A stretch of 64,000 bases of DNA, from sequence record PV745554.1. One strand, 5' to 3'. Shown piece by piece: positions 52,781 to 64,000 of the stretch. A program made the position numbers and the translations under genes. Numbering within the stretch: the first letter of the stretch is position 1; each line of letters opens with the position of its first letter. The notes under the pieces were generated by a model. That model ran no database searches. It was given only the letters and a program-made list of their open reading frames with translations, and was not told the origin of the DNA.

Positions 52781-53525
52781 CTTGCATTACTTCAAACGGA
52801 AGCGCTCCGAGTGGAAGTACCAAAGATTTACTTTGGTTTATCAACAACTTGCGGACGCCGCCTCGGACACGTCGATCGCGTCCAAGTTCCAGACCTACCA
52901 GCACCTGCCGCACCTGGACCCGAAGGTCCTCAAGGCGCGCATGGACGCGGGGCATGTTGACGATCGCGGCCGGCCGATCCCGGACCGCAAGGAGCACTTC
53001 CGCCGCATCGTGACCTCGGTCGACGCGGCCCAGAAAAAGGGCGCGCGCAACGACTACACGGTCGTCCAGGTGTGGGGCGAGACCCACGATCGCAAGCACT
53101 ACCTGATCTACCAGGAGCGCAAGAAGGTCGAGATCAACGACCTGATCGAGATGGTCGAGCGCATCTCCAAGCGCTTCGACGTCGACTCCATCCTGGTCGA
53201 GGACAAGGGCAACGGCACCGCCTACATCCAGGCGCGGGGCCAGACCGACAACCAGCGGCGGCTCGCGCCGGCCCCGATCGAGGCGATCCAGGTCCCCAGC
53301 ACCTACTCCAAGGAGTTCCGCTTCAACGAGGTCATCCCGATGATCGAGGCCCAGGAGGTCTACCTGCCCGACAAGGCGCCGTGGCTCGACCTCTTCATCC
53401 GCGAAGTCGGGCAGTTCCCCGAAGGCGCCCACGATGACCAAGTCGACGCCATGACGCAGTACCTCCGCTGGGCCAAGTCCAAGCGCACGCGGTTCGGCGC
53501 GCGCAAGGTCGGCTCGATGGGCTGA
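52749..53525 (+). CDS. terL: terminase large subunit, C-terminal RNase H-like nuclease part (in +1 frame)
   Basis: LGEVLW...YQQ...TSVDAAQK...NDYTV...ILVEDKGNG...HDDQVDAMTQ; no clear start of its own. Confidence 0.88.
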   Translation, partial: ALGEVLWDYYDLHYFKRKRSEWKYQRFTLVYQQLADAASDTSIASKFQTYQHLPHLDPKVLKARMDAGHVDDRGRPIPDRKEHFRRIVTSVDAAQKKGARNDYTVVQVWGETHDRKHYLIYQERKKVEINDLIEMVERISKRFDVDSILVEDKGNGTAYIQARGQTDNQRRLAPAPIEAIQVPSTYSKEFRFNEVIPMIEAQEVYLPDKAPWLDLFIREVGQFPEGAHDDQVDAMTQYLRWAKSKRTRFGARKVGSMG

Positions 53526-53551
53526 TTAACCATCTTCGTTCACCCTGTCCG

Positions 53552-53588
53552 GGCCTGTTAACCTTAACACAACGAGGGTTAACAGGCC
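53552..53588. repeat. inverted repeat with TTAA motifs downstream of terL
   Basis: GGCCTGTTAACC...GGTTAACAGGCC. Confidence 0.75.
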
Positions 53589-53716
53589 AGGGACCCATCG
53601 AAATTAACCCTTGGGGACCCAGGGAAATCATCAGCCGGGGACCCTGCCAAATTCAACGCTGGGGACCCACCAAAATCATCCCTCGGGGACCCTAGCAAAT
53701 CGTGGCTCGGGGACCC
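53589..53716 (+). repeat. six GGGGACCC motifs with exact 24-bp period
   Basis: Copies at 53589 (AGGGACCC), 53613, 53637, 53661, 53685, 53709, each followed by AAAT. Confidence 0.92.
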
Positions 53717-53737
53717 TGGCAAATCAAGGAGCCGGCG

Positions 53738-53971
53738 ATGGCCGAACTCATGAGCCTGCTGTTCAACCTCGCCCCGTTCCTGCTGCTGGCGATCGTCGTC
53801 TACCACGTCCTGGAGGCCTTCTGGGCGGTCTGCCTGTGGGTCTACGGCCTGCGTACCCTGTGGAAGCTCCACCGCGACGACCTGTGGGAGGCGCTGAGCC
53901 TGGAGCGCGCCCTGAGCCCGTTCACCCATCACCGGGACATGAACGGCAACCTGCCGCGCCCGCCGACCTGA
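53738..53971 (+). CDS. small membrane protein
   Basis: ATG after AAGGAG; hydrophobic N-terminal half. Confidence 0.7.
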   Translation: MAELMSLLFNLAPFLLLAIVVYHVLEAFWAVCLWVYGLRTLWKLHRDDLWEALSLERALSPFTHHRDMNGNLPRPPT

Positions 53972-54043
53972 TGCCCCAAGTCACGGACTGTAGGTTTCAT
54001 GACAAGGTGGATTATTCCACAACGAAATCAAAGGCTTATCGCC

Positions 54044-54292
54044 ATGTCATTCCGCGCGTTCCTCCACGACCTCGCCGTCCGTTTCGTAGTTTTGGGGTGG
54101 ATTTTTGCCCAAAAACCCCAGAAATGGGCTCCAAAAGGGCATAATTTTCAGCCCATCCCGCCGGCCCAGGTCGAGCGGCAGGACCTCCGGGGGCGCGTGC
54201 TCCTCCTGAGGAGCTTCGGCGTCCTCGCCGCCGCATGCACAACCATGGGCCTGTGTCAATACCTGCTCTGGCGCCGCGCGGCCATGTCATAG
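54044..54292 (+). CDS. possible small membrane protein
   Basis: Two hydrophobic stretches; atypical codons. Confidence 0.4.
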   Translation: MSFRAFLHDLAVRFVVLGWIFAQKPQKWAPKGHNFQPIPPAQVERQDLRGRVLLLRSFGVLAAACTTMGLCQYLLWRRAAMS

Positions 54293-54339
54293 ACTAGGGC
54301 TTTCGTGACGACCTCACGTTTACGTTACCGGATAACCCC

Positions 54340-54495
54340 TTGCCGCACCTGCTCTTCTGGCTCTCGGCCGCCTGCATCGCCCTGGCCTGGGTGATCTGGG
54401 CCGCCGCCCGGCTGATCCGCCGCGATCGCCAGCGCCGCGCCGCTGGAGCGCGCCTGGGCCGGCGCACCGCAGCCGCCCATATGCGCCATATCTGA
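54340..54495 (+). CDS. possible small membrane protein (absent from ORF track)
   Basis: TTG start; PHLLFWLSAACIALAWVIWAAA then Arg-rich tail. Confidence 0.5.
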   Translation: MPHLLFWLSAACIALAWVIWAAARLIRRDRQRRAAGARLGRRTAAAHMRHI

Positions 54496-54541
54496 GCCCT
54501 TATCGCCCTTTAGGGCTCAGATACGCGACATTACGGCCCTC

Positions 54542-54700
54542 TTGACGCCCCCGCGTTCTGAGGAACACGGGGGCGTTTTGACGTCGGCGCATTTCAGACT
54601 TGACGCGCGAGCATTTCAACGCCGGAGCGTTTTGACGCGGGCGCATTTTCGATTCAACGCGCGAGCGTTTTGACGTCCGAACGTTTTTCAACTTGACGTC
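54542..54700 (+). repeat. degenerate array of TTGACG/TCAACG-containing units
   Basis: TTGACG at 54542, 54578, 54600, 54632, 54670, 54693; units end GC(A/G)TTT. Confidence 0.75.
54545..54580 (+). terminator. terminator-like hairpin
   Basis: ACGCCCCCG..GTTC-TGAG-GAAC..CGGGGGCGT then TTT. Confidence 0.55.
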
Positions 54701-54725
54701 GTTTCATTTACCACGAGCGCCTTAG

Positions 54726-54952
54726 GGTTAACCGCCGAGCCTGGGAATGGTTAAGGCCCGTTAACCATGTTTGTTAACCCTCAGGCCGTTAACCTATCAC
54801 CCGTTAAGGTTAACGCACCCCGGCCATTAACCCTGAGCGTGTTAAGGTTAACACCCCGTTAAGGTTAACAATTAAGGTTAACGCCCCCGGTAACCCTGCC
54901 GCCGTTAAGGTTAACAAACATGGTTAACGGGCCAGACCGGCGTTAACCTTAA
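54726..54952. repeat. dense TTAA cluster
   Basis: 19 TTAA in about 225 bp; TTAAGGTTAA five times plus one reverse copy; one perfect TTAA-N7-TTAA at 54848. Confidence 0.85.
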
Positions 54953-55011
54953 CGGCCAGAGCCCAGGCCCTACCGGGTATGACCTGCCGGCCATACCCGG
55001 TAGGGCGCGCC

Positions 55012-55269
55012 TCACGCGTCCGCGTCGGGCGACGCCGCCGCGCCGTATTCGTGGTCATTCCAGAGTATGCCCAGAATTTCGTCAGGCCCGAACGAAGGAA
55101 GCAAGGTTTGCAGGGCGTCGTATGTCTCGCGAAAGGCGCTCGCGTCGTCGTCCTGCATCCAAACCGACTCCTTGCCGGCCTTGTCGCGGAACGTGTACGC
55201 CGCGCCGTTCCCGTAGCTGTCGAGGGCGAAGCGTTCGCCCTCAGAAATGCGAATCGGTCCTGAATACAT
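55012..55269 (-). CDS. hypothetical protein
   Basis: ATG after GGAG on minus strand (MYSGPIRISEG). Confidence 0.7.
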   Translation of the reverse strand: MYSGPIRISEGERFALDSYGNGAAYTFRDKAGKESVWMQDDDASAFRETYDALQTLLPSFGPDEILGILWNDHEYGAAASPDADA

Positions 55270-55326
55270 GGGGCGATCTCCAAGGGCGCGGGGTGCGCCG
55301 ACCCGTGCAATCTGGACCCCCAATTC

Positions 55327-55392
55327 TTAACAAAACGTAAACGCCAGAGCCTTTTCCGTGTTTACGTTTTGTTAAGACTTTGCCGCTAGTGT
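55327..55392. promoter_or_regulatory. divergent pair of CtrA-box promoters
   Basis: TTAA-CAAAACG-TAAA (55327) and TTTA-CGTTTTG-TTAA (55361), then GCTAGTGT. Confidence 0.8.
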
Positions 55393-55432
55393 TCCTTGTG
55401 CCGGCGCATCCCGCGCCCTTGGAGCCTGGATC

Positions 55433-55726
55433 ATGTCCAACCGTTACGACGTTGAATATACAGACACTTTCGCAGGCGAGGCGAATTATTCTGGGGTCCG
55501 CCGCGCGGCCGTGACCATGCCAGAGCTAACCCATTATGGGTACGATGGCGGAACAAACTACGCCAAGGCGAACAAGGTTTTTAACCGCGAACTCATGAAG
55601 CGCGCCAAGGCCGCCATGGGTCTAACGGGCGTTCGCGGCGTTTCGGCCGCGCACGGTGACGGGCTGGAATTTCGGCCCTATAGGTCCGCGACGGTGCTTT
55701 TCGTGACCTATCGCGACGCCGACTAG
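55433..55726 (+). CDS. hypothetical phage protein
   Basis: EYTDTFAGEANYS...RAKAAMGLTG motif. Confidence 0.8.
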   Translation: MSNRYDVEYTDTFAGEANYSGVRRAAVTMPELTHYGYDGGTNYAKANKVFNRELMKRAKAAMGLTGVRGVSAAHGDGLEFRPYRSATVLFVTYRDAD

Positions 55727-55887
55727 GCAAGCCGCCCGGCGCCCTCCAGAGGACGCTGGGCGAACGCTTGCCCAGCGCGTTAACCATGTTTTTGAAAAGC
55801 GCCCAGCCCCGCCGTAGCGCCCCTACGGTTCGAAGAGCCCGGCCCTGCCGGTCCTGCCGGCTACAGGTCCAATCTAGCGGCCAATCC

Positions 55888-55963
55888 TTAACAAAACGTA
55901 AACGCCAGAATCTTTTTCGGGGGCTTTCGCGTTTACGTTTTGTTAAGAAATAGGGTCTAGTGT
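55888..55963. promoter_or_regulatory. second divergent pair of CtrA-box promoters
   Basis: Near copy of 55327-55392; boxes at 55888 and 55932. Confidence 0.8.
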
Positions 55964-56011
55964 CCCTCTTGTCGGGGCCACCCCCGGCGCTCTTTGACAT
56001 TGTGAGGCAAC

Positions 56012-56200
56012 ATGATTCCCTCTGAAGTTCTGAATCCGCGCGAGCACTGGACTCCCGTCGCCTCGCGCGAGGAAGCCGAAAAGATCGCCGCGCGCTGCAC
56101 CGAAGGCGACCCCGTCGGCCGCTACTACGTCGAGGAAAAGGGCGCCGGCTACGCTGTCGCCTATGACGACGAGGCGGGCGAATTCGTCGCCTACCTGTAA
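56012..56200 (+). CDS. small hypothetical protein
   Basis: ATG after GAGG. Confidence 0.75.
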   Translation: MIPSEVLNPREHWTPVASREEAEKIAARCTEGDPVGRYYVEEKGAGYAVAYDDEAGEFVAYL

Positions 56201-56228
56201 ACCTTTTGTTAAGACCTGACCTCTAAAC
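56198..56228 (+). promoter_or_regulatory. CtrA-box promoter
   Basis: TAAA-CCTTTTG-TTAA-N10-CTAAAC. Confidence 0.8.
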
Positions 56229-56262
56229 CGGGGTCAGGTTCAACCCCTGGAGGCCCTGCCCC

Positions 56263-56649
56263 ATGCCCAACCCCGGACTCTTTCGCGCCATGGCCAAAGC
56301 CGCCAAGCCGGTGATTAAGGCCTATCACGCCGACTTCGAAATTCACGACGCCAAGGTGATTCACGGCCTAAAGGACGGCGATGTCATCTTGTGGGCGCCG
56401 GACGCGCACGGAACGACTCTTATCGTCCTGGCGCGGGCTGGACGGCCCAACCATCGCGCCGCCGAACACTTCGAAGCCGCCAAGGCCCGCAACGCCCCCG
56501 CGTGGTTTGTCGCGTCGCTGTACCATGACGGCGAGTCGGGTCACTGGAGCCTTTCGCCGGCGCCGGACGCGCCCGAAATCGTCGCCCGCTTCGCCGAACA
56601 AGCCGCCCGCGACACCGCCCCGGACCCGGTGCGCGAGCTACACCTTTAA
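56263..56649 (+). CDS. hypothetical protein
   Basis: ATG after GGAGG. Confidence 0.8.
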   Translation: MPNPGLFRAMAKAAKPVIKAYHADFEIHDAKVIHGLKDGDVILWAPDAHGTTLIVLARAGRPNHRAAEHFEAAKARNAPAWFVASLYHDGESGHWSLSPAPDAPEIVARFAEQAARDTAPDPVRELHL

Positions 56650-56676
56650 CCTTTTGTTAAGACTTGACCTCTAAAC
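56646..56676 (+). promoter_or_regulatory. CtrA-box promoter
   Basis: Perfect TTAA-CCTTTTG-TTAA-N10-CTAAAC. Confidence 0.88.
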
Positions 56677-56711
56677 AGGGGTCAAGTCCAACCCCCTGGA
56701 GGCCCTGCCCC

Positions 56712-57251
56712 ATGTCCGTTATCGAAACCGCCAACCTCTCGCGCGGCCGTGTTCTCACCGTCGAAATCGACGACTGCGCCCAAGAGCCCTACGCCGACGA
56801 CAAGGGCGTGCGAATCGTCGTCCTGCATCGCCATTGGACGAACCCCGCCGCCGGCCTGCTGGACTCGGTCGAGGACGTTCAAGCCTTCGAGGCGCAGAAC
56901 GCCGCGCCCGACTCTGAATGGGCGATCTTTGAGCTATGGGTGATGGACCATAGCGGCCGGACCTTCAAGGCCGGCGCGCTGGGCGCCGGAAACCCGTTCG
57001 GCGCCGGACCCTACGCCCAATGGGATAGCGGCCGGGTCGGAGTCATCGCCCTGGCGCGCGCCGAGTGGCCCGCCGCCGACCTCAAGACCGCCCAAGGCGT
57101 CGCCGACACCTACGGCGCATGGGCCGAAGGCGAGGTTTACCAATTCGTCATTTCGAACCGCCGGGGCGACGTGCTCGACTCGTGCGGCGGGTTCTACAGC
57201 GTCGCCGAAGCCCTGGCCGCCGGCCGCGACGCCGCCAAGGTGAAAGCGTGA
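56712..57251 (+). CDS. hypothetical phage/plasmid protein
   Basis: WDSGRVG...W..GEVY...DSCGGFY motif. Confidence 0.8.
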   Translation: MSVIETANLSRGRVLTVEIDDCAQEPYADDKGVRIVVLHRHWTNPAAGLLDSVEDVQAFEAQNAAPDSEWAIFELWVMDHSGRTFKAGALGAGNPFGAGPYAQWDSGRVGVIALARAEWPAADLKTAQGVADTYGAWAEGEVYQFVISNRRGDVLDSCGGFYSVAEALAAGRDAAKVKA

Positions 57252-57442
57252 GAGTCGCCCGCGAAAGCTTCGCCGTGTTCTGGACCCGCCCCGGCTGGCG
57301 CGTCCAGTTTCACGCCGACATGAAACGGGCGCTGTACCCGACCGCCAAGGCCGCCGCCGACGCCTTCGCCGCCATGTTCCCGGCTGATCAGGTCAAGAGC
57401 GTGCGCGACGGCTCCGGCCGCTTCCTGGCCTTCAAGCGCTAG
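57248..57442 (+). CDS. small hypothetical protein
   Basis: GTGA overlap. Confidence 0.65.
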   Translation: MRVARESFAVFWTRPGWRVQFHADMKRALYPTAKAAADAFAAMFPADQVKSVRDGSGRFLAFKR

Positions 57443-57447
57443 ACCAG

Positions 57448-57482
57448 ACGCCCCGGAAAACTTTTCCGGGGCGTTTACTTTT
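57448..57482 (+). terminator. Rho-independent terminator
   Basis: ACGCCCCGGAAAA-C-TTTTCCGGGGCGT then TTACTTTTT. Confidence 0.75.
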
Positions 57483-57505
57483 TGTTAAGGAATGGCGTCT
57501 AGTGT
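57474..57505 (+). promoter_or_regulatory. CtrA-box promoter
   Basis: TTTA-CTTTTTG-TTAA-N10-CTAGTGT. Confidence 0.8.
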
Positions 57506-57550
57506 CCCTCTTGCCGCCGGGCAATCCCGCCCGGCCTTGGAGTTCTTCCC

Positions 57551-58069
57551 ATGCCGGAATTTGTCCTAGATACGTCGGGCCAAGTCGCCCCGCCCGCCGC
57601 CGCCAAGCTTTGGCCGCACCCCCTGGCCTGGAATCAGTTGAGCGATTTTGCTCAAGGCTACATCGAGGCCCTGTTTTTCACCGAGTCGTCGCCGGCCTAT
57701 GACCGCGCCGAATGGTTCGGCGCCGAGTGTCAAGAGGCCCTGGAGGAAGGCACGGCGGACGGGAACATTCCGGGCGATGTCGGATTCGCCGACCTCGCGC
57801 CCGCCACCCTGGCGCGCATCGTCGCCGATTGCGCCGACTTCCAACGCCAGCACGCCGACGCCCTGGCCAAGGCCTATGACCACGGCGGCGCGTCGGGCGA
57901 CTATGACGACGCCGCCGCCGGCCGTGATTATTGGTATACCCGCAACGGCCATGGCGTCGGGTTCTGGGATCGCGGACTCGGCGCGATCGGTGAGGCCCTG
58001 AGCAAGGCCGCCCGCTACAGCGAGCAAAACGCCTCTTTCGAGGATGACGAAAAGGTCTATCTCTCTTAA
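57551..58069 (+). CDS. hypothetical phage protein
   Basis: GRDYWYTRNGHGVGFWDR motif. Confidence 0.85.
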   Translation: MPEFVLDTSGQVAPPAAAKLWPHPLAWNQLSDFAQGYIEALFFTESSPAYDRAEWFGAECQEALEEGTADGNIPGDVGFADLAPATLARIVADCADFQRQHADALAKAYDHGGASGDYDDAAAGRDYWYTRNGHGVGFWDRGLGAIGEALSKAARYSEQNASFEDDEKVYLS

Positions 58070-58097
58070 CCTTTTGTTAAGACTTGGCCTCTAGGGT
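58066..58097 (+). promoter_or_regulatory. CtrA-box promoter
   Basis: Perfect TTAA-CCTTTTG-TTAA-N10-CTAGGGT. Confidence 0.88.
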
Positions 58098-58161
58098 CAG
58101 GTTGTCCCGGCGCCGGGGCTGGAACCCCCGGCGCGTCCATTCCGTGAAAGGAATCCATACC

Positions 58162-58908
58162 GTGTCTTTTGGTCAATTCTCCGCCGACGCCCGCGCCCCG
58201 CTGTCGAAATCCGCCATGCTGGACGCCCTCCCCGCCGCGCGCCGTGACGCTCTGGTCAAGTCCAGCAAGCCGGCGCGAAACACGCTCGATTACACAACCG
58301 CCGACGGCGTGCGCCGCGTGCGCTTGCATGACACCGACGTTTTGACGTTCCACGTTAACGGCGCCGTCGAGATCAACACGGGCGGCTGGAATACCCTAAC
58401 CACGCGCGACCGAATCAACACGTTCGCCCCGCCTCACGTGCGCGTCTACAGCGACAAGGGCCGCGCCGTGGTTCGCGCCTTGCCGGCCGGTGACGGCGCC
58501 GTCACGTGGTCCAGCCCCGCCGCGTCCAAGCCGTTCGCCAAGCGCGCCACCGTTCACCCGGACGGCCGAATCGAAGTGGACGCGACCGTCAAAGAACTGG
58601 AGGCGATTCCTAGCCTCATCCGCCGCTATCTGGAGGCCTTCAAGGCCGGTTTCCCGTTCAACTCGTCGGGTGACCCGTGGATGACGCCCGGCGCCCTTGT
58701 CGCCCCGGAAACCGCCCTTGACTGGCTGGGCGCCGACAGCGGCAAGCCGTACCTGTTCGACTCGATCCTGTTTCACGCCCATGTCGCGGCCGGCCTGACC
58801 GAAGAGGGCGCGGCGTTCTACATGCGCGAGGCCGCCCGGCGCGGCGTCGACAAATTCAATCTCGGCCGCATCCGGCGTTACCTCAAGCGTTGCCTTCGCG
58901 AAGCCTAG
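58162..58908 (+). CDS. hypothetical phage protein
   Basis: GTG after AAGGA; LHDTDV...INTGGWNTLTTRDRIN motif. Confidence 0.8.
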   Translation: MSFGQFSADARAPLSKSAMLDALPAARRDALVKSSKPARNTLDYTTADGVRRVRLHDTDVLTFHVNGAVEINTGGWNTLTTRDRINTFAPPHVRVYSDKGRAVVRALPAGDGAVTWSSPAASKPFAKRATVHPDGRIEVDATVKELEAIPSLIRRYLEAFKAGFPFNSSGDPWMTPGALVAPETALDWLGADSGKPYLFDSILFHAHVAAGLTEEGAAFYMREAARRGVDKFNLGRIRRYLKRCLREA

Positions 58909-58917
58909 ACCCTGCCC

Positions 58918-58950
58918 GGCCGCGCCGCCCTGGCGCGGCCTTTCTTTTCC
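58918..58950 (+). terminator. Rho-independent terminator
   Basis: GGCCGCGCC-GCCCT-GGCGCGGCC-TTTCTTTT. Confidence 0.8.
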
Positions 58951-58959
58951 GTGTACGCG

Positions 58960-58992
58960 TTAACTTCTTGTTAAGACTTTACGCGCTAATGT
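58960..58992 (+). promoter_or_regulatory. CtrA-box promoter
   Basis: Perfect TTAA-CTTCTTG-TTAA-N11-CTAATGT. Confidence 0.88.
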
Positions 58993-59044
58993 CCCCTTGC
59001 CGCCGGGCAATCCCGCCCCGCCGCCTCTCAAAGGATCGCCACCC

Positions 59045-59665
59045 ATGGCCCGCCTGATCAAAGCCAAGTCCACCGCCGAACAAGCCGAAGCCCTGGCCAG
59101 CCTGCAAAAAATGCTCAAGCCGGGCGACACGGTTTATCCCGTGCTGCGCCACGTCTCGACCTCCGGCATGATGCGAGTCATTGACCTGATTATCCCGGTC
59201 ACGGTCGAGACGTCGCAAACCCTGCCGGCCGGCGCGCGCGGCTTCAAGATCGGCGTTCAAGCCTATGCGACCCCGCCGGAGCGCAACGCCCCCCGCGCCT
59301 TCTCAACCGGCGCCGTGACGGCTTTCGACGCCGACACCGTGACCATTGCCTATCAGGCCACCGCCGACGGCCGGGGCGAGGCGGAATCGGTGACGTGGCC
59401 CCGTGGTCAGGTCAAGTTCTACGCCAAGAGCAAGCGCCCTGGCGTCCGCTCGATCGGCTGGCTTGCCGCGAAGGCTATGGGCGACACTTTCGACGCCGAC
59501 CGCCAAGGAATCAAGGTCGGCGGGTGCGGTATGGATATGGGCTTTCACCTCGTTTACAGCCTGGGCCGCACGCTCTGGCCAAAGGGAACGAAAAAGCCGC
59601 ACGGCTCGCGCAACGGCGAGCCCGACCGCGACGGCGGTTATGCGCTGAAACATTCCTGGCTTTAA
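59045..59665 (+). CDS. hypothetical phage protein with internal insertion
   Basis: LRHVSTSGMMRVI...GCGMDMGFHLVYSL motifs. Confidence 0.85.
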   Translation: MARLIKAKSTAEQAEALASLQKMLKPGDTVYPVLRHVSTSGMMRVIDLIIPVTVETSQTLPAGARGFKIGVQAYATPPERNAPRAFSTGAVTAFDADTVTIAYQATADGRGEAESVTWPRGQVKFYAKSKRPGVRSIGWLAAKAMGDTFDADRQGIKVGGCGMDMGFHLVYSLGRTLWPKGTKKPHGSRNGEPDRDGGYALKHSWL

Positions 59666-59694
59666 CTTTTTGTTAAGAGTTTAGCCGCTAATGT
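59662..59694 (+). promoter_or_regulatory. CtrA-box promoter
   Basis: Perfect TTAA-CTTTTTG-TTAA-N11-CTAATGT. Confidence 0.88.
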
Positions 59695-59743
59695 CTCCTT
59701 GCGGCCGGGCAATCCCGCCCGGCCGCACCCGGAACCAAAGCCC

Positions 59744-60016
59744 ATGACCCGCGCTCAAGTCCTCGCCGAAATCGCCGCCCTCGAAGGCGTCCAAGCCCGT
59801 TTCGTCACCGAAACCAAGGAATTCCGCGTCACCCTGACTTTTGGCCCGCTTCCCATGGGGCGCGGCTCGCAAGCCTGGATGAACGCCCGCCGGGAAGCCG
59901 TCGCCTACTACACCGAAGACAAGGCCGACGCCCTGGCCACCGCCCGCGACATGTCGGCCCGTTGGGTCGCCATGACCCCGGCGCAACGTGATCACCTGTA
60001 CCGCAACGCCGCGTAA
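59744..60016 (+). CDS. hypothetical protein
   Basis: ATG downstream of the promoter and leader hairpin. Confidence 0.75.
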   Translation: MTRAQVLAEIAALEGVQARFVTETKEFRVTLTFGPLPMGRGSQAWMNARREAVAYYTEDKADALATARDMSARWVAMTPAQRDHLYRNAA

Positions 60017-60044
60017 CCCTTCGTTAAGACCCGGCCGCTAGAGT
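60013..60044 (+). promoter_or_regulatory. CtrA-box promoter
   Basis: GTAA-CCCTTCG-TTAA-N10-CTAGAGT. Confidence 0.75.
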
Positions 60045-60080
60045 GGCCGGGTCATCAACCCCCCGCAAGGATCGCCCGAC

Positions 60081-60359
60081 ATGCGCAAGCCCCTGACCCA
60101 AGAGCAAAAGGCCCGCCGCCGCGCGCAACGCCGCGCCGCCCGCCTGACCTGGAGCGACGAACGCCGCGCGGCCGAATACGCCCGCCAATCGCGCTTTTTC
60201 CTGATGATCGCCGAACGCGCCCAAGTCGCGGGCGACCGCACCGAAGCCGCCCGCCTCGCCACCGTCGCGCAACGCAAGGTGACCAACTGGCGCATGGCGG
60301 AGGCGTGCGCCCGCATCAACGCCCTTTCCGTCCACGCCTGGGCCGCTGTCGCGGCCTAA
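60081..60359 (+). CDS. basic helical hypothetical protein
   Basis: ATG after AAGGA. Confidence 0.75.
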   Translation: MRKPLTQEQKARRRAQRRAARLTWSDERRAAEYARQSRFFLMIAERAQVAGDRTEAARLATVAQRKVTNWRMAEACARINALSVHAWAAVAA

Positions 60360-60376
60360 CTGGAGAACCCCGCCCC

Positions 60377-60700
60377 ATGCCCCCGATGACTCACCCTCAC
60401 GCCCTGGCCTTGATCGCGCTCGCCGAAAAGGTCCTGCCCCTGACCAAGCTGCACCCGCTGGACCAAAGGGCCGCCGCTGTCGATCTTATCGGCGACCTCT
60501 ACAGCCTCGCCGACTCCATCGACGCCACCGCCGGCCACTTGGTCGCCGCTGTCAACGGCGCCTTGCGCGACGGCTGCGAGGGTTACGCGCCCAAGAGCCG
60601 CGCCGCCGCCGCTGTCGCCACCGTCCGCGCCGACGAACTGCGCTCCGCCCTGGAGGCGTACACCGAAGCCGCCGCCCTGGCCCTGCCGAAGGTTGCCTAA
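60377..60700 (+). CDS. hypothetical protein
   Basis: ATG after GGAG. Confidence 0.7.
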   Translation: MPPMTHPHALALIALAEKVLPLTKLHPLDQRAAAVDLIGDLYSLADSIDATAGHLVAAVNGALRDGCEGYAPKSRAAAAVATVRADELRSALEAYTEAAALALPKVA

Positions 60701-60701
60701 C

Positions 60702-60845
60702 GTGACCGCCCTGCAATGCGCCGGCTTCGCCGCTCAACGTCGCGGCGTCAAATGGTGGAATAACCCGCATCCGGCCGGCTCTCCCGCCGCCTATCAATGG
60801 GATCAAGGCCACACTTTCGCCCGCCGCTCGATCACCGCCGCCTAG
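60702..60845 (+). CDS. Rmf/CrpP-fold-like miniprotein (absent from ORF track)
   Basis: 47 aa: GFAAQRRGVKWWNNPHPAGSPAAYQWDQGH fits G..A...G.....NP.......W..G. Confidence 0.65.
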   Translation: MTALQCAGFAAQRRGVKWWNNPHPAGSPAAYQWDQGHTFARRSITAA

Positions 60846-60858
60846 GAAAGGCCCCGAC

Positions 60859-61440
60859 ATGTCGCAACGCTACCGCCTCGCGCCCGCCGCCCGCGTCTCC
60901 AAGGCGCTTTCGGACCTGCTTTATGCGGCGTCGGAAGTCGTCGCCACGGCGGCGCAATATGAGACGACGCCCGCCGGTCAAACCAAGCTCGCCAAGATGC
61001 GCGGCGACCTGATCACCGAAAGCGCCGGCGCCCTCGTGCGCAAGCCGCCTAGCGCCGTCCTCGCAACCCTCGTTTGGGTTGTCGAAATGGCGCAAGCCCG
61101 CGCCACGGATGCGGATTTCAATTCCGCCCAAGAGGGGCTGGACGAACACGACGCTCTAGCGTTCGTCGCCGATTGGCTGGAAGCCGAAGGCGTGGACGTG
61201 ACCGTCATTCGCAACGCCGCGCCCTCGGCCGAAGCCTTGGCCGAACTCGTCGCCCGCCGCGACGCCGAACAAGAGGCGCTGGACGCCCTGGAAGCCGTCC
61301 AGAGCCCCGAAGACCCCGCCGACGTGATCACCGACGCCTTGCGGGGCTATCTGGGCGCCACGCTGGCGGAAAACCACGCCGACGACGTGCTAGACGCCCT
61401 CACGCGCGCCGGCTTCCAAATCACCCGCAAGGAGGCCTAA
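60859..61440 (+). CDS. hypothetical protein
   Basis: ATG after AGGAAAGG. Confidence 0.8.
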   Translation: MSQRYRLAPAARVSKALSDLLYAASEVVATAAQYETTPAGQTKLAKMRGDLITESAGALVRKPPSAVLATLVWVVEMAQARATDADFNSAQEGLDEHDALAFVADWLEAEGVDVTVIRNAAPSAEALAELVARRDAEQEALDALEAVQSPEDPADVITDALRGYLGATLAENHADDVLDALTRAGFQITRKEA

Positions 61441-61445
61441 AGCCC

Positions 61446-62273
61446 ATGACCAAAGCCCGCCACGCCTTCGAGGCCGTCCGCGTCGAATCGGCCGGGGAGT
61501 CGATCCTTGATCGCTTCACCGTGACCAAGAAACGCACCGCCGAACAAGCCTATGACGCGGCCGAAGCCCTTTGCGAGGCCGCCCGCGCCCTCGCGCCGGG
61601 TCAAGCCCATTTCGTCCGCGAAGTAAACGCGCCGGGCGAAGAGACGCCCGCCCAAGCCCTGGACCTCGCCAGCGTCTCGACGGCCGACCTCATCGCCGAA
61701 CTCTACCGCCGCCCGGTCGCCGTCTGTGTGTTCGAAGGCGTGGACGTGCTCGCCGAAGCGGGCGGCGCCTTCGATGACGCCGACGACGCCGCCCAATGGC
61801 TGGCCAGCAAGTCCAGCTATATCGGCGACGCGATGAGCGGCGCCGGCTGGGACTCGGTGCGCTATCACCTGACCGCCGACGGCCGCGCCACCGACGAGGG
61901 CGACGACGAGGAAGAGCCCGCCGACGCCCTCCCCGTCGCCGTGACCCTGGAGCAAGGCGACGCCGTCCGCGTGGTCGGGCGCTTCGCCACCGTGGGCGAA
62001 GCCGTCGATTTCCTGGCCTCTCCGATCCGCGATCAAGACGCCCTCGCCGCCGGCCGCTACGGGATCGACGCGCCGCACGGCGTGGCCAGCGACGCGGACG
62101 CCGTGACCCTGGCGAACAAGCTGGGCTTTCAAGTATTCCGCTCCATGGGGTCGGTCTACTACGCCCCGCCCGGCGTGGCGGTTTCCGGCAACGCCGACGG
62201 CCGGGGCTGGAAAGGCGGTTTCGACGACATCGCCGCCGCCGCCCTCGCCGCCCTGGCCACCGTCGACCCCTAG
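61446..62273 (+). CDS. acidic hypothetical protein
   Basis: ATG after AGGAGG. Confidence 0.75.
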   Translation: MTKARHAFEAVRVESAGESILDRFTVTKKRTAEQAYDAAEALCEAARALAPGQAHFVREVNAPGEETPAQALDLASVSTADLIAELYRRPVAVCVFEGVDVLAEAGGAFDDADDAAQWLASKSSYIGDAMSGAGWDSVRYHLTADGRATDEGDDEEEPADALPVAVTLEQGDAVRVVGRFATVGEAVDFLASPIRDQDALAAGRYGIDAPHGVASDADAVTLANKLGFQVFRSMGSVYYAPPGVAVSGNADGRGWKGGFDDIAAAALAALATVDP

Positions 62274-62462
62274 CCGCCTAAGTCATCATTCCTACCGTCT
62301 ATGACATGTCACGGGCTGAATACTTGGCCCGTGACGACTTCCCCTAGTAAAGCTCACGCCTGTTTTCGTGACATAGCGCAAGGAACTGAAATCGTTGGAA
62401 AAACTCCTAGAGGGTCACAAAGTTCTGGTTTGGCTGCTGCTGCTGGCGTGCCTCTGGCGCTT

Positions 62463-62495
62463 TTAACCCTTTGTTAAGACTTTACCCGCTAGGGT
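62463..62495 (+). promoter_or_regulatory. CtrA-box promoter
   Basis: Perfect TTAA-CCCTTTG-TTAA-N11-CTAGGGT. Confidence 0.88.
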
Positions 62496-62550
62496 GACTT
62501 TGCGGCCGGGCAATCCCGCCCCGCCGCCTTCCTTCTCTGGAGCCGCTACC

Positions 62551-62991
62551 ATGCAAACCGCTTCCGTGATTCTCCCCGCCCAAACCCTGGCCGGCGCCGA
62601 CCTTGGCCCCGTGCTGATGGTCTTCGCCCTGGAACTGTCGCAGCACTTCGGCGACGTCGCCCAAGCCCCGACCGTCGAGCGCTGGACCGATGAGGCGACG
62701 GGCGCCGAATTCGTCGCCGACTGTGTGGCGTTCACGGTGTCGGCGGACTGGACCGCCAAGGGCGGACGCATGGCGCGCCGCCTGGAGAACATGGCCGCCC
62801 GCTACGCCGCCCCGTGCGAGGCCCCGGCCCTGACCGTCCAGCACGCCGACGGCTCAACCGTCTACGTCGCCGCCCTGGAGGCCCTGGCGCGCCCTGCCCC
62901 GGTGCAAGGCCCCTCGCGCATCGCAGACCCGGCTTTCCTGCCCCGCCAGCGTGAGGACAAGGCCGCCCGCTTCGAGCGCCTGACCGCCTAG
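62551..62991 (+). CDS. hypothetical protein
   Basis: ATG after GGAG. Confidence 0.8.
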   Translation: MQTASVILPAQTLAGADLGPVLMVFALELSQHFGDVAQAPTVERWTDEATGAEFVADCVAFTVSADWTAKGGRMARRLENMAARYAAPCEAPALTVQHADGSTVYVAALEALARPAPVQGPSRIADPAFLPRQREDKAARFERLTA

Positions 62992-63015
62992 GCCCTGGCC
63001 TAGCCTCTCCCCTTG

Positions 63016-63048
63016 GCGCACCGCCTCGCAAGCGGTGCGCTTTTCTTT
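63016..63048 (+). terminator. Rho-independent terminator
   Basis: GCGCACCGC-CTCGCAA-GCGGTGCGC-TTTTCTTT. Confidence 0.85.
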
Positions 63049-63053
63049 GCGTA

Positions 63054-63086
63054 TTAACTTGTTGTTAAGAGTTTAGCTGATAGTGT
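63054..63086 (+). promoter_or_regulatory. CtrA-box promoter
   Basis: Perfect TTAA-CTTGTTG-TTAA-N11-ATAGTGT. Confidence 0.85.
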
Positions 63087-63136
63087 CTCCTTGTTGGCGG
63101 CGCATCCCGCGCCGCTCCTCTCTTGGATCGCTCGAC

Positions 63137-63529
63137 ATGGCCCGCCCTTCTGACCTGCTCAACGTCAACGCCGCCCGCGTCCTGGCTTGCCTCGAAGCCC
63201 TGGCCGGCGTCGTCAAGACCGCCCCGGAAGCCGACCGCGCCGCCTTTTCCTTCCTGCTGGACGCGGCCGAATTCGTCGCCTCCTGGCGCCGCAACCATAC
63301 GGAAACCGACCGTCGCCGCGCCTACGGTGCGGCGTGCGCGGCGCAAGCCCTGGCCCTGACCAATGCCTATCAGCCCGCGACCATGCAAGGCGGGGCGGTG
63401 CGCCGCGCCCTGGGCGCCTATGCCGCCGCCCTTAAGCTGCTGCTGGACGGCGAGCCGGTGCAAGCCGTGCGCGCGGCCGAAGGCGCCGCCCAAAGCGTGC
63501 GCGGGCGCTTCGCTAACACCCGCATCTAG
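63137..63529 (+). CDS. Ala-rich hypothetical protein
   Basis: ATG downstream of the leader hairpin. Confidence 0.75.
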   Translation: MARPSDLLNVNAARVLACLEALAGVVKTAPEADRAAFSFLLDAAEFVASWRRNHTETDRRRAYGAACAAQALALTNAYQPATMQGGAVRRALGAYAAALKLLLDGEPVQAVRAAEGAAQSVRGRFANTRI

Positions 63530-63561
63530 TAACCTTTTGTTAAGACCCCCTGGCCTATAGT
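63529..63561 (+). promoter_or_regulatory. CtrA-box promoter
   Basis: GTAA-CCTTTTG-TTAA-N11-CTATAGT. Confidence 0.8.
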
Positions 63562-63587
63562 CAGGGGGTCGCAAGGAGACACCCGAC

Positions 63588-63779
63588 ATGACCCGCCCCG
63601 GCCCCGCCTCGCTCCTCTCGCCCGCCGCCACCTTCTCGGCGCATAACCTGACCCTTCCGGGCGCTCGCCCTATGCCCCTGCCCAAGGCGCAAGGCCTGAC
63701 CTATGGCCAGTGCATCGCCCTGGGCGCGAGCCTGGGCTTGCTGGGCTTCCTCGCCTTGCGCGTGTTCGGTCTGGTCTGA
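63588..63779 (+). CDS. small protein with C-terminal TM helix
   Basis: ATG after AAGGAG; IALGASLGLLGFLALRVFGLV. Confidence 0.7.
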   Translation: MTRPGPASLLSPAATFSAHNLTLPGARPMPLPKAQGLTYGQCIALGASLGLLGFLALRVFGLV

Positions 63780-64000
63780 CCAGACCCCCGGCGCCCCCGG
63801 TCGCCTCGCGGTAGGGCTGTCCCATATTGAGACGGCCCTACCGGGGTAGTGTTTCTTTTTGGGACGAGGGACCCAAAGGCCCCCTACGTTAACCATTTTT
63901 GGCGGCGCCCCCCGGCGCCTCAGGATAGCATTGAACTTTTCGGTTGACATAATCAGACCCTCAGGCGAAGAAGGGCGCGTTCAGGCCGAGCGGCGCCCCC

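What the first reader, a model, noticed from the sequence alone, without database searches (positions are those of the whole stretch)
55327..63561. Most transcription units of the terminal-repeat region start at a CtrA-box promoter, often built into the upstream stop codon
Seen: 14 boxes at 55327, 55361, 55888, 55932, 56198, 56646, 57474, 58066, 58960, 59662, 60013, 62463, 63054 and 63529. Six are perfect TTAA-N7-TTAA and the rest differ by one base. The 12 rightward boxes are followed 10-11 nt later by (C/A)TA(G/A/T)-type -10 boxes. At 56198, 56646, 58066, 59662 and 60013 the first half site is the TAA stop of the preceding gene. I saw no TTGACA cassette in this block, and no such boxes at the 6-43 kb cassettes. 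Known: CtrA~P is abundant in swarmer cells, which phiCbK-like phages infect via pili and flagellum, and CtrA sites have been reported in such phages. Inference: a strict two-tier programme in which the first-expressed block is a host cell-cycle-gated regulon of about 15 unknown proteins, followed by a sigma70/GcrA tier. The gene-by-gene modular layout is the notable part.
Basis: partly seen in the sequence, partly recalled or inferred. Interest (0 to 1): 0.85.

Follow-up and report, generated by a model that had tools for sequence, protein, structure and literature searches.

The report
CtrA-box promoter cassettes, phage terminal repeat
Nearly every gene in the terminal repeat of this Caulobacter phage (BL64, a phiCbK relative) has its own promoter carrying a binding site for the host cell-cycle regulator CtrA; this was already published for its close relatives, so only the fine anatomy described here is new.

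Summary
The window is the right end of Caulobacter phage BL64 (Poindextervirus rogue). All 14 reported TTAA-N7-TTAA boxes exist. A 15th lies at 54848. All sit in the direct terminal repeat (DTR) and none in the 202 kb of unique genome.

Twelve rightward boxes each lie 10-11 nt upstream of a (C/A)TA -10 element and head 12 transcription units (genes 342-358). Five use the upstream TAA stop as their first half-site. The 2.5-36 kb part of the window uses a different GTG-TTGACA-N17-TAGAA cassette.

The core interpretation is already published (Mascolo et al. 2022). That paper reported CtrA sites concentrated in phiCbK-like DTRs. It showed CtrA~P binding and CtrA-dependent activation for phiCbK gp005 and gp018. 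BL64 gene 356 (box 62463) is the gp018 ortholog.

New details found here:
- The boxes are parts of 50-70-nt composite cassettes.
- A covarying plus-strand RNA hairpin encloses the -10 wherever the box overlaps a stop codon.
- The cassettes flank gene indels between relatives, like T4 PeSLs.
- Published ctrA401 data imply swarmer (G1)-class behaviour.

The temporal order of the two promoter classes, and any GcrA role, remain untested.

The parts
52747..64000 (+). Right copy of the direct terminal repeat (DTR) of phage BL64; it contains all the boxes
   Evidence: GenBank repeat_region 213381-224634 of PV745554.1; genome-wide box count
55327..55341 (-). Leftward box (reads TTTACGTTTTGTTAA) heading gene 341c (55012-55269, minus strand); weak -10 (CCAGAT), then a 5'UTR hairpin and GGAG
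55361..55375 (+). Box heading gene 342 (55433-55726); class A cassette with a 5'UTR hairpin about 55403-55417
55888..55902 (-). Leftward box with a good -10 (gCTAGAt) but no downstream ORF; it faces the 3' end of gene 342; role unexplained
55932..55946 (+). Box heading gene 343 (56012-56200); class A, 5'UTR hairpin 55971-55988
56198..56240 (+). Class B cassette heading gene 344: box 56198-56212 contains the TAA stop of gene 343; an 11-bp hairpin (56213-56240) has the -10 CTA in its loop
56646..56688 (+). Class B cassette heading genes 345-346: box 56646-56660 contains the TAA stop of gene 344; 12-bp hairpin 56661-56688 around the -10
57446..57488 (+). Intrinsic terminator of gene 346 (57446-57476) whose last stem bases and T-run run into box 57474-57488; heads gene 347; 5'UTR hairpin 57516-57535
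58066..58103 (+). Class B cassette heading gene 348: the box contains the TAA stop of gene 347; 10-bp hairpin 58081-58103 with four G.U pairs on the + strand. The annotated TTG start at 58102 lies inside the promoter, so the real start is probably GTG at 58162
   Evidence: (PHROG match starts at residue 22)
58918..58974 (+). Intrinsic terminator of gene 348 (58918-58940) followed by box 58960-58974, which heads gene 349; class A
59662..59676 (+). Box containing the TAA stop of gene 349; heads gene 350 (ortholog of phiCbK gp012); class A with 5'UTR hairpin 59700-59727 (z = -5.1)
60013..60053 (+). Class B cassette heading the five-gene unit 351-355: box GTAACCCTTCGTTAA contains the TAA stop of gene 350; 11-bp hairpin 60028-60053
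62463..62477 (+). Box heading gene 356 (62551-62991), the ortholog of phiCbK gp018, whose promoter was tested experimentally; class A, 5'UTR hairpin 62502-62527
63015..63068 (+). Intrinsic terminator of gene 356 (63015-63041) followed by box 63054-63068, which heads gene 357 (ortholog of gp019)
63529..63570 (+). Class B cassette heading gene 358 (ortholog of gp020): the box abuts the TAG stop of gene 357; 11-bp hairpin 63544-63570 with compensatory changes in relatives
54720..54960 (.). Array of 19 TTAA half-sites, mostly GTTAAGGTTAAC, including the perfect box at 54848; it lies between convergent genes 340 and 341c, so it is not a promoter position
   Evidence: present in relatives

Best explanation
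Each box is the activator site of a host-RNA-polymerase promoter that has no usable -35 hexamer of its own. With the TA of the -10 placed at -12/-11, the box spans about -38 to -24. Its invariant promoter-proximal half-site is GTTAA. The distal half-site is more variable and sits over the -35 position. Phosphorylated host CtrA bound there recruits polymerase, so each DTR gene or short operon is an independent CtrA-gated unit (13 units for genes 341c-358, all of unknown function).

The boxes are the cores of 50-70-nt composite cassettes of two kinds. Class A has, in order, an upstream terminator in 3 of its 7 rightward copies, then the box, the -10, a GC-rich stem-loop at the 5' end of the mRNA, the Shine-Dalgarno sequence and ATG. 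Class B is used where there is no intergenic space. In class B the box overlaps the upstream stop codon, and a 10-12-bp hairpin starts right after the box with the -10 in its loop. Only RNA read through from the upstream gene can contain both arms of that hairpin. It is therefore most likely the 3'-end hairpin (weak terminator or stabiliser) of the upstream gene, folded into the next promoter.

Shown: the sequence anatomy, its statistics, covariation and orthology. Shown in phiCbK by others: CtrA~P binding and CtrA dependence. Inferred: the position of the transcription start, the role of the hairpin, and immediate expression in the infected swarmer cell (G1-class behaviour). Because the cassettes are repeated, they also act as recombination points that add or remove gene modules.
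For: Enrichment and exclusivity of boxes in the DTR. Fixed 10-11-nt distance to the (C/A)TA -10, and an invariant A4, C5, T9 and G11-T12-T13-A14-A15-G16 (GTTAAG) in 14/14 copies. All 6 mismatches of the rightward boxes are in the distal half-site, as reported for host fliQ and fliL. No sigma-70-consensus promoter on the + strand of the DTR. Gene 356 is the ortholog of phiCbK gp018 (71% identity), with the box at the same place. The gp018 and gp005 promoters bind CtrA~P, lose binding when the box is mutated, and are 5- to more than 29-fold down in a ctrA-ts strain, in uninfected cells. Host CtrA-activated promoters typically have one near-consensus box at -35. The same box/-10/hairpin layout recurs in 9 phages, including distant Colossus. 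Class B hairpin: 23/23 occur where the box overlaps an upstream stop, and 0/48 elsewhere. Wobble pairs number 31 G.T against 4 A.C, so the structure is strand-specific. 97.5% of cells are paired, 5 of 10 pairs carry compensatory changes, and 0/500 shuffles reach this; the second alignment is 100% paired. G1-class inference. Cassette families and indel boundaries.
Against: No transcription start site or 3' end has been mapped in any of these phages, so the -35/-10 assignment is geometric only. Class B hairpins lack a U-tract, so they are not canonical intrinsic terminators. No BL64 promoter has been tested, and only two phiCbK promoters have (both class A). Six of the seven spacer positions are conserved, which the CtrA consensus does not require. 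An extra factor or constraint may therefore act on the same DNA. The ctrA401 argument for G1-class timing rests on plasmid reporters in uninfected, unsynchronised cells. The published model places expression later. Counts across the 9 phages are not independent, because many cassettes are orthologs.
Confidence: 0.8

Rival explanations
1. Lytic deferment (Mascolo et al. 2022). The same CtrA-activated promoters stay silent in the freshly infected swarmer cell. They fire only when CtrA is resynthesised in the predivisional cell, so the DTR block is a delayed switch and not the first tier.
For: It is the published hypothesis for phiCbK. Most host CtrA-activated promoters with a single -35 box peak in the early to mid predivisional stage. 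SciP represses late-S-class CtrA promoters in swarmer cells.
Against: The gp005 and gp018 promoters are already nearly inactive in ctrA401 at the permissive temperature. Late-S-class promoters are elevated in that allele at 30 C, and only G1-class promoters fail. By 15 min after infection phage RNA is already 14% of transcripts and about 41% of phiCbK genes are at their peak. Per-gene data for the DTR were not available to me.
Confidence: 0.25
2. The extended motif (T/G)T(A/T)AC-N-TTTT-GTTAAGA is read mainly by another protein, either a phage-encoded factor or a host co-regulator such as SciP or MucR. On this reading the resemblance to a CtrA box is only part of the signal.
For: Six of seven spacer positions and the two bases after the box are nearly invariant in 14 copies. 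They stay pyrimidine-rich even in Colossus. The CtrA consensus does not require this.
Against: Purified CtrA~P shifts the phiCbK probes, and mutating the box abolishes the shift. The promoters work in uninfected cells and need functional CtrA. No phage factor is therefore needed. Spacer conservation can also come from shared descent and gene conversion among cassettes.
Confidence: 0.1
3. The boxes and the two half-site arrays act chiefly as a CtrA sink. About 30 strong sites per genome, multiplied by replication, would titrate CtrA~P away from the host origin and regulon. Promoter activity would be secondary.
For: Thirty boxes plus 19 clustered TTAA half-sites at a non-promoter position in each DTR copy. 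The phage also encodes a GcrA homolog that could push S-phase.
Against: Every rightward box has a -10, a leader and a gene at fixed distances. A pure decoy would not need these. Reporter data show real CtrA-dependent transcription. I could not estimate site number against CtrA copy number with these tools.
Confidence: 0.08
4. The repeats are recombination scars. A promoter-hairpin module spread by duplication and gene shuffling, and the number of boxes reflects that history and not selection for CtrA control of each gene.
For: The cassettes form 48-68-nt repeat families. Genes 342 and 344 are flanked by near-identical cassettes and are missing in Rogue and/or Swift. 22 of 28 homology breakpoints left of 60100 fall in cassettes covering 24% of that DNA.
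Against: The half-sites and the -10 are the best-conserved parts while the hairpin sequences drift with compensation. The layout persists in Colossus, whose relatives' DTRs share almost no DNA identity with the phiCbK group. Both points indicate selection on function. This explanation complements the main one and does not replace it.
Confidence: 0.05

Closest known systems
CtrA-binding-site clusters in the DTRs of phiCbK-like phages (the 'LPEG' phages of Mascolo et al. 2022, PMC9437464)
   Same: Same phage lineage; Rogue, 92% identical to BL64 here, was analysed in that paper. Same TTAA-N7-TTAA sites concentrated in the DTR, intergenic and upstream of genes of unknown function. CtrA~P binding and CtrA-dependent activation were shown for phiCbK gp005 and gp018. 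BL64 box 62463 is the positional ortholog of the gp018 site.
   Different: A text search of the paper finds no occurrence of 'stop codon', 'terminator', 'hairpin' or 'operon'. So the stop-codon overlap, the fixed -10, the two cassette classes, the hairpin around the -10 and the cassette-flanked indels appear to be undescribed. The paper proposes delayed expression, whereas the ctrA401 comparison made here points to swarmer-phase expression.
Host CtrA-activated promoters of Caulobacter crescentus (single near-consensus box over -35; G1 class such as pilA and sciP, late-S class such as fliQ and fliL)
   Same: One box at the -35 position. The distal half-site is imperfect and the proximal TTAA perfect, as in fliQ (CTAA-N7-TTAA) and fliL (AAAA-N7-TTAA). 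Activity depends on CtrA.
   Different: The phage boxes share a conserved spacer and flanks. They are packed one per gene, and they overlap stop codons and RNA hairpins. Which host class they belong to is inferred, not measured.
PeSLs (promoter-early stem-loops) of T4-like phages: composite terminator/promoter cassettes that mediate modular shuffling (PMC2839356, PMC4122927)
   Same: Short repeated cassettes that combine a promoter with a stem-loop, placed between small genes of unknown function. They are found at the boundaries of insertions and deletions between close relatives.
   Different: No sequence relationship. PeSLs, as I recall them, use a plain host sigma-70 early promoter, whereas these cassettes depend on a cell-cycle activator. 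In class B the stem-loop encloses the -10 instead of preceding the promoter. Early timing is not established here.
Pre-early genes in the long terminal repeat of coliphage T5 (first-step-transfer DNA)
   Same: A long non-permuted DTR of about 10 kb, noted as T5-like for phiCbK. It is filled with small genes of unknown function, each with its own promoter.
   Different: Two-step DNA transfer and pre-early timing are not shown for phiCbK-like phages. T5 pre-early promoters are strong sigma-70 promoters, not activator-dependent (my own knowledge, not tested here).

Membership tests
CtrA-activated promoter (box over -35) | TTAA-N7-TTAA dyad with at most one mismatch | tested here: met
   15 sites against 0.93 expected; 7 perfect against 0.03 expected
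CtrA-activated promoter (box over -35) | Box overlaps the -35 position of a promoter that has a recognisable -10 at the proper distance | tested here: met
   (C/A)TA lies 10-11 nt after all 12 rightward boxes. The -35 window reads ACCTTT-like, so it is not a sigma-70 hexamer. The assignment is geometric only, because no TSS has been mapped
CtrA-activated promoter (box over -35) | CtrA~P binds the site | not testable with these tools
   Shown by EMSA for the phiCbK gp018 site, orthologous to BL64 box 62463, and for gp005
CtrA-activated promoter (box over -35) | Transcription requires functional CtrA | not testable with these tools
   lacZ fusions of phiCbK gp005 and gp018 are more than 29-fold and 5-fold down in ctrA401. 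No BL64 promoter has been tested
G1 (swarmer)-class CtrA promoter | Poor activity in ctrA401 (T170I) at the permissive temperature, where late-S promoters are elevated | tested here: inconclusive
   Met for phiCbK gp005 and gp018 when searches are read together. This is an indirect cross-paper inference with no synchrony data
LPEG phage signature (Mascolo 2022) | CtrA sites strongly concentrated in the DTR or gap region, and intergenic | tested here: met
   15 per DTR copy and 0 in 202 kb of unique DNA; 13 of 15 lie upstream of a gene
PeSL-type composite promoter/stem-loop cassette | Repeated short cassette that joins a promoter and a stem-loop between genes | tested here: met
   Repeat families of 48-68 nt; hairpins
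PeSL-type composite promoter/stem-loop cassette | Cassettes lie at indel boundaries between close relatives | tested here: met
   The gene 342 and gene 344 modules are flanked by duplicated cassettes and are absent from Rogue and/or Swift; 22 of 28 breakpoints fall in cassettes
PeSL-type composite promoter/stem-loop cassette | Sequence relationship to the T4-group PeSL, and an early sigma-70 promoter | tested here: not met
   The motif is different and the promoter is activator-dependent. This is an analogue, not a member
Rho-independent terminator (for the class B hairpin) | GC-rich stem-loop followed by a U-tract | tested here: not met
   The five class B stems are followed by TTCAACC, CCAACC, GTCCCG, ATCAAC and GCAAGG, and the scan does not call them. 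Three class A upstream hairpins (57446, 58918, 63015) do meet the definition

The most novel reading that the evidence does not exclude
The DTR is a swarmer-phase (G1-class) immediate-early regulon built from mobile, PeSL-like CtrA-promoter/RNA-hairpin cassettes. Each cassette insulates one gene and lets gene modules be swapped between phages. The roughly 30 strong boxes plus the half-site arrays per genome additionally soak up CtrA~P. Together with the phage GcrA homolog, this helps drive the infected swarmer cell into S phase.
Probability: 0.1. Interest if true: 0.65.

Novelty: already known. Interest (0 to 1): 0.3.

Why it matters
The main point is that a phage ties a block of its genes to the host's cell-cycle master regulator. 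This is biologically attractive, but it was published in 2022 for this phage group with binding and reporter data. BL64 simply carries the same system.

What this analysis adds is a precise parts list that makes the open question testable, namely whether the block is the first thing expressed in the swarmer cell or a delayed switch:
- the predicted -10 elements and transcription start positions;
- 13 defined transcription units;
- a covarying hairpin that should mark the RNA 3' ends;
- the observation that the published ctrA401 result already classifies these promoters with the swarmer-phase group.

The cassette-flanked gene indels also offer a second example, outside the T4 group, of regulatory cassettes acting as shuffling points for small accessory genes.

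Tried and rejected
1. Per-gene infection RNA-seq for phiCbK (McLaughlin et al. 2023, Table S3): the stored file is cut before the phage sheets, so DTR gene timing could not be read.

2. Function of the DTR proteins: no Pfam hit reached its cut-off. All PHROG families hit have unknown function. Four proteins gave no significant PDB sequence match. I ran no further search on them.

3. IMG/VR scan with TTAACCTTTTGTTAA: mostly single chance hits in unrelated contigs, plus Rogue itself. It was uninformative.

4. Sphingobium phage Lacusarx: the record is not opened at its DTR, so I did not pursue it.

5. Rfam scan of the DTR: only two sub-threshold microRNA chance hits.

6. A small RNA from the leftward promoter at 55888: no ORF, and a fold z-score of only -1.5. 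Left unexplained.

7. The 58-codon ORF ending in box 62463: it has the same length in phiCbK but is interrupted in Swift, so it is probably not a gene.

8. Class B hairpin as a protein operator: rejected, because the arms covary without sequence conservation and the wobble pairs are strand-specific.

9. Class B hairpin as a canonical intrinsic terminator: rejected, because there is no U-tract.

10. GcrA/CcrM control of the TTGACA cassettes: no GANTC site in any of 11 cassettes.

Full report
**Identity of the region.** The window matches Caulobacter phage BL64 (PV745554.1, Poindextervirus rogue, host C. vibrioides CB15) at 100% identity. Window coordinate equals record coordinate minus 160,634. 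Window 52747-64000 is the right copy of the direct terminal repeat, or DTR. Close relatives are RBC8/11/63 (96%), Rogue (92%) and Swift (89%). phiCbK itself is about 79% identical over a third of the region.

**Check of the observation.**
- Exact TTAA-N7-TTAA occurs 7 times in the window, against 0.03 expected.
- With up to one mismatch there are 15 sites, against 0.93 expected, all between 54848 and 63543.
Six of them are perfect and eight differ by one base.
- I rebuilt the whole 224,634-bp genome from the public record. Each DTR copy has 15 boxes and the 202 kb of unique DNA has none.
- TTAA density is 4.4 per kb in the DTR and 0.25 per kb elsewhere.
- Twelve boxes face right. Each is followed after 10 or 11 nt by CTA (ATA once).
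- Measured from the first base of the box, the start codon lies 59-88 nt downstream.
- The annotated genes give 12 rightward units: 342 | 343 | 344 | 345-346 | 347 | 348 | 349 | 350 | 351-355 | 356 | 357 | 358.
- The leftward box at 55327 heads gene 341c. The leftward box at 55888 has a good -10 but no gene.
- The TAA stop of the upstream gene lies inside the first half-site at 56198, 56646, 58066, 59662 and 60013. At 63529 the TAG stop touches the box.
- The consensus scan finds no sigma-70-type promoter on the + strand of the DTR.

**The second promoter class.** Between 2.5 and 36 kb the window carries about 15 copies of a different cassette: ttggcg..GTG-TTGACA, 17 nt, TA(G/C/T)AA, then the leader CTCGACGACAACGAGGAGG and ATG. 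Across the whole genome a stricter pattern for this cassette gives 16 copies, none in the DTR. The two promoter classes are therefore real and do not mix. None of the 11 window copies carrying the GTG-TTGACA core has a GANTC site within -60..+90. The sequence gives no support for a GcrA/CcrM-dependent tier.

**What is already known.** Mascolo et al. 2022 (PMC9437464) made the following points.
- phiCbK-like phages, including Rogue and Swift, concentrate predicted CtrA sites in their DTRs, in intergenic positions upstream of genes of unknown function.
- Purified, phosphorylated CtrA shifts probes from upstream of phiCbK gp005 and gp018, and mutating the box abolishes the shift.
- lacZ fusions of both promoters are active in wild type. 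[quoted passage not shown]

In phiCbK I find the same boxes upstream of gp004, gp005, gp008, gp009, gp012, gp018, gp019 and gp020. BL64 gene 356 is 71% identical to gp018, and box 62463 sits at the same place. Genes 350, 357 and 358 are orthologs of gp012, gp019 and gp020. The core of the finding is thus a re-discovery in a new isolate.

**Anatomy beyond the 15-mer.**
- In the 14 promoter-type copies the motif is (T/G)T(A/T)AC-N-TTTT-GTTAAGA.
- A4, C5, T9 and G11-G16 (GTTAAG) are invariant.
- All mismatches lie in the promoter-distal half-site. The same is reported for host fliQ and fliL.
- With the TA of the -10 at -12/-11, the box covers about -38 to -24. The -35 window reads ACCTTT, which is not a sigma-70 hexamer. 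This fits an activator-dependent promoter.
- The boxes belong to repeat families of 48-68 nt.

Class A cassettes are at 55361, 55932, 57474, 58960, 59662, 62463 and 63054.
- Each has a GC-rich stem-loop a few bases after the predicted start, often GCCGGGC-AAUCCC-GCCCGGC, followed by GGAG or GGAU and ATG.
- Fold z-scores range from -0.6 to -5.1.
- Three of them are preceded by canonical terminators, at 57446-57476, 58918-58940 and 63015-63041.
- The terminator at 57446-57476 runs into its box.

Class B cassettes are at 56198, 56646, 58066, 60013 and 63529. Each has a perfect 10-12-bp hairpin that starts at the first base after the box, with the CTA of the -10 in its loop.

**The class B hairpin.**
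- Across nine phages (BL64, phiCbK, Rogue, Swift, Karma, BL10, Ccr2, BL57, Colossus) I collected 94 rightward cassettes.
- All 23 class B copies sit where the box overlaps the stop codon of an upstream ORF. None of the 48 cassettes without such an overlap has the hairpin.
- Wobble pairs are 31 G.T against 4 A.C, so the structure is specific to the + strand.
- In an alignment of two paralogous promoter groups, 97.5% of cells pair and 5 of 10 pairs carry compensatory changes. No shuffle of 500 reaches the observed values, and slid registers pair at 55% or less.
- A second group pairs at 100%.
- The arms differ in sequence between cassettes, which excludes a protein operator.
- The left arm lies between the box and the -10. 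Only RNA read through from the upstream gene can therefore contain both arms.
- I infer that this is the 3'-end hairpin of the upstream gene, folded into the next promoter. It has no U-tract, so it is a weak or atypical terminator or a stabiliser. This step is inference.

**Cassettes as shuffling points.**
- Against Rogue, the BL64 homology breaks at 55415 and resumes at 55867, and the two pieces overlap in Rogue over the divergent promoter pair. Gene 342 is therefore an insertion flanked by duplicated cassettes.
- Against Swift the same holds for gene 344, which lies between the 92%-identical cassettes at 56198 and 56646.
- Left of 60100, 22 of 28 homology breakpoints in six comparisons fall inside cassettes that cover 24% of the DNA.
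- This parallels the PeSL composite terminator/promoter cassettes of T4-like phages. It is an analogy, because no sequence is shared.

**Timing.** Mascolo et al. propose the reverse, with expression deferred until CtrA returns. Delaby et al. 2019 show that ctrA401 (T170I) at 30 C raises late-S promoters (fliQ, fliX, fliL, cpaB). The same allele fails at G1-class promoters (pilA, sciP, hfsJ). The phiCbK DTR promoters fail in the same strain at 30 C, so they behave like the G1, swarmer-phase class. The infection RNA-seq of McLaughlin et al. starts at 15 min, and its phage table was not available.

**Gene content.** No DTR protein matches a Pfam family above its cut-off. All fall in PHROGs of unknown function, and four gave no significant PDB match. 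The PHROG match of gene 348 starts at residue 22. The annotated TTG start lies inside the promoter, so the real start is probably GTG at 58162.

**Verdict.** The interpretation as CtrA-dependent promoters is well supported, through orthology to tested promoters, but it is already published. The first-tier timing is plausible and unproven, and the GcrA part is unsupported. The new details are the stop-codon overlap, the covarying hairpin around the -10, the cassette-flanked indels and the G1-class argument. They are useful refinements and not a new kind of system.

Noticed in passing
window 54720-54960: Nineteen TTAA half-sites in 240 bp, mostly as GTTAAGGTTAAC (6-nt spacing). The array lies between convergent genes 340 and 341c, so it is not a promoter. 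Similar arrays occur at the same place in phiCbK, Swift, Karma, Ccr2 (17-nt tandem GGTTAACGCCCCGTTAA), BL57 and Colossus. It is a candidate origin-like element or CtrA sink.
   Followed up: partly
window 54574-54709: Five iteron-like repeats, TTGACG-N5-GCATTT, in a 54-nt tandem arrangement. They sit just upstream of the half-site array and downstream of two terminator-like hairpins (54489-54523 and 54545-54576).
   Followed up: partly
window 53526-53727: Between the end of the terminase ORF and gene 338 there are four TTAA half-sites (TTAACCAT, TTAACCTTAAC, GGTTAAC). These are followed by about six tandem 24-nt units of the form GGGGACCC-N4-AAAT(C/T)A. They could be a packaging or replication signal.
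   Followed up: no
window 56000-60000: GANTC (CcrM) sites are concentrated here: 25 in 4 kb, mostly inside genes 343-349, against 0 to 7 per 4 kb elsewhere in the window. Genome-wide the density is 3.2/kb in the DTR and 1.2/kb in unique DNA. The expectation from base composition is about 3.1/kb.
   Followed up: partly
window 50996-53525: The large terminase reading frame is split into two overlapping ORFs in different frames (50996-52780 and 52584-53525). The GenBank record has no CDS there, and locus tags 336 and 337 are missing. The DTR boundary at 52747 lies in the overlap. This could be a frameshift, an assembly problem at the repeat junction, or recoding.
   Followed up: no
record PV745554.1, left against right DTR: The two DTR copies are annotated as identical, but they are 11,252 and 11,254 bp long. 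The 2-bp difference lies between the boxes at window 60013 and 62463.
   Followed up: no
window 55735-55902, minus strand: The leftward box at 55888 has a good -10 (gCTAGAt) and points at the 3' end of gene 342, with no ORF downstream. A similar leftward box follows the gene 342 ortholog in Ccr2. The possible short RNA is not unusually stable (z = -1.5) and has no Rfam match.
   Followed up: partly
window 62274-62477: A conserved spacer of about 200 nt lies upstream of box 62463. It holds a 58-codon ORF that ends in the second half-site. The ORF has the same length in phiCbK but is interrupted in Swift, so it is probably non-coding.
   Followed up: partly
class A leaders, e.g. window 57516-57535, 59700-59727, 62502-62527: The loop of the 5'UTR hairpin, (A/C)AUCCC, is complementary to the GGAU or GGAG ribosome-binding sequence a few bases downstream. 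This might couple folding of the leader to translation.
   Followed up: no
window 2518-35910: A second, highly conserved promoter cassette occurs in about 15 copies: ttggcg..GTG-TTGACA-N17-TA(G/C/T)AA, followed by the leader CTCGACGACAACGAGGAGG. None of the copies is in the DTR, and none of the 11 copies checked carries a GANTC site.
   Followed up: partly
window 58102: The annotated TTG start of gene 348 lies only 21 nt after the box, inside the predicted promoter. The PHROG alignment and the Rogue ortholog point to GTG at 58162 as the real start.
   Followed up: yes
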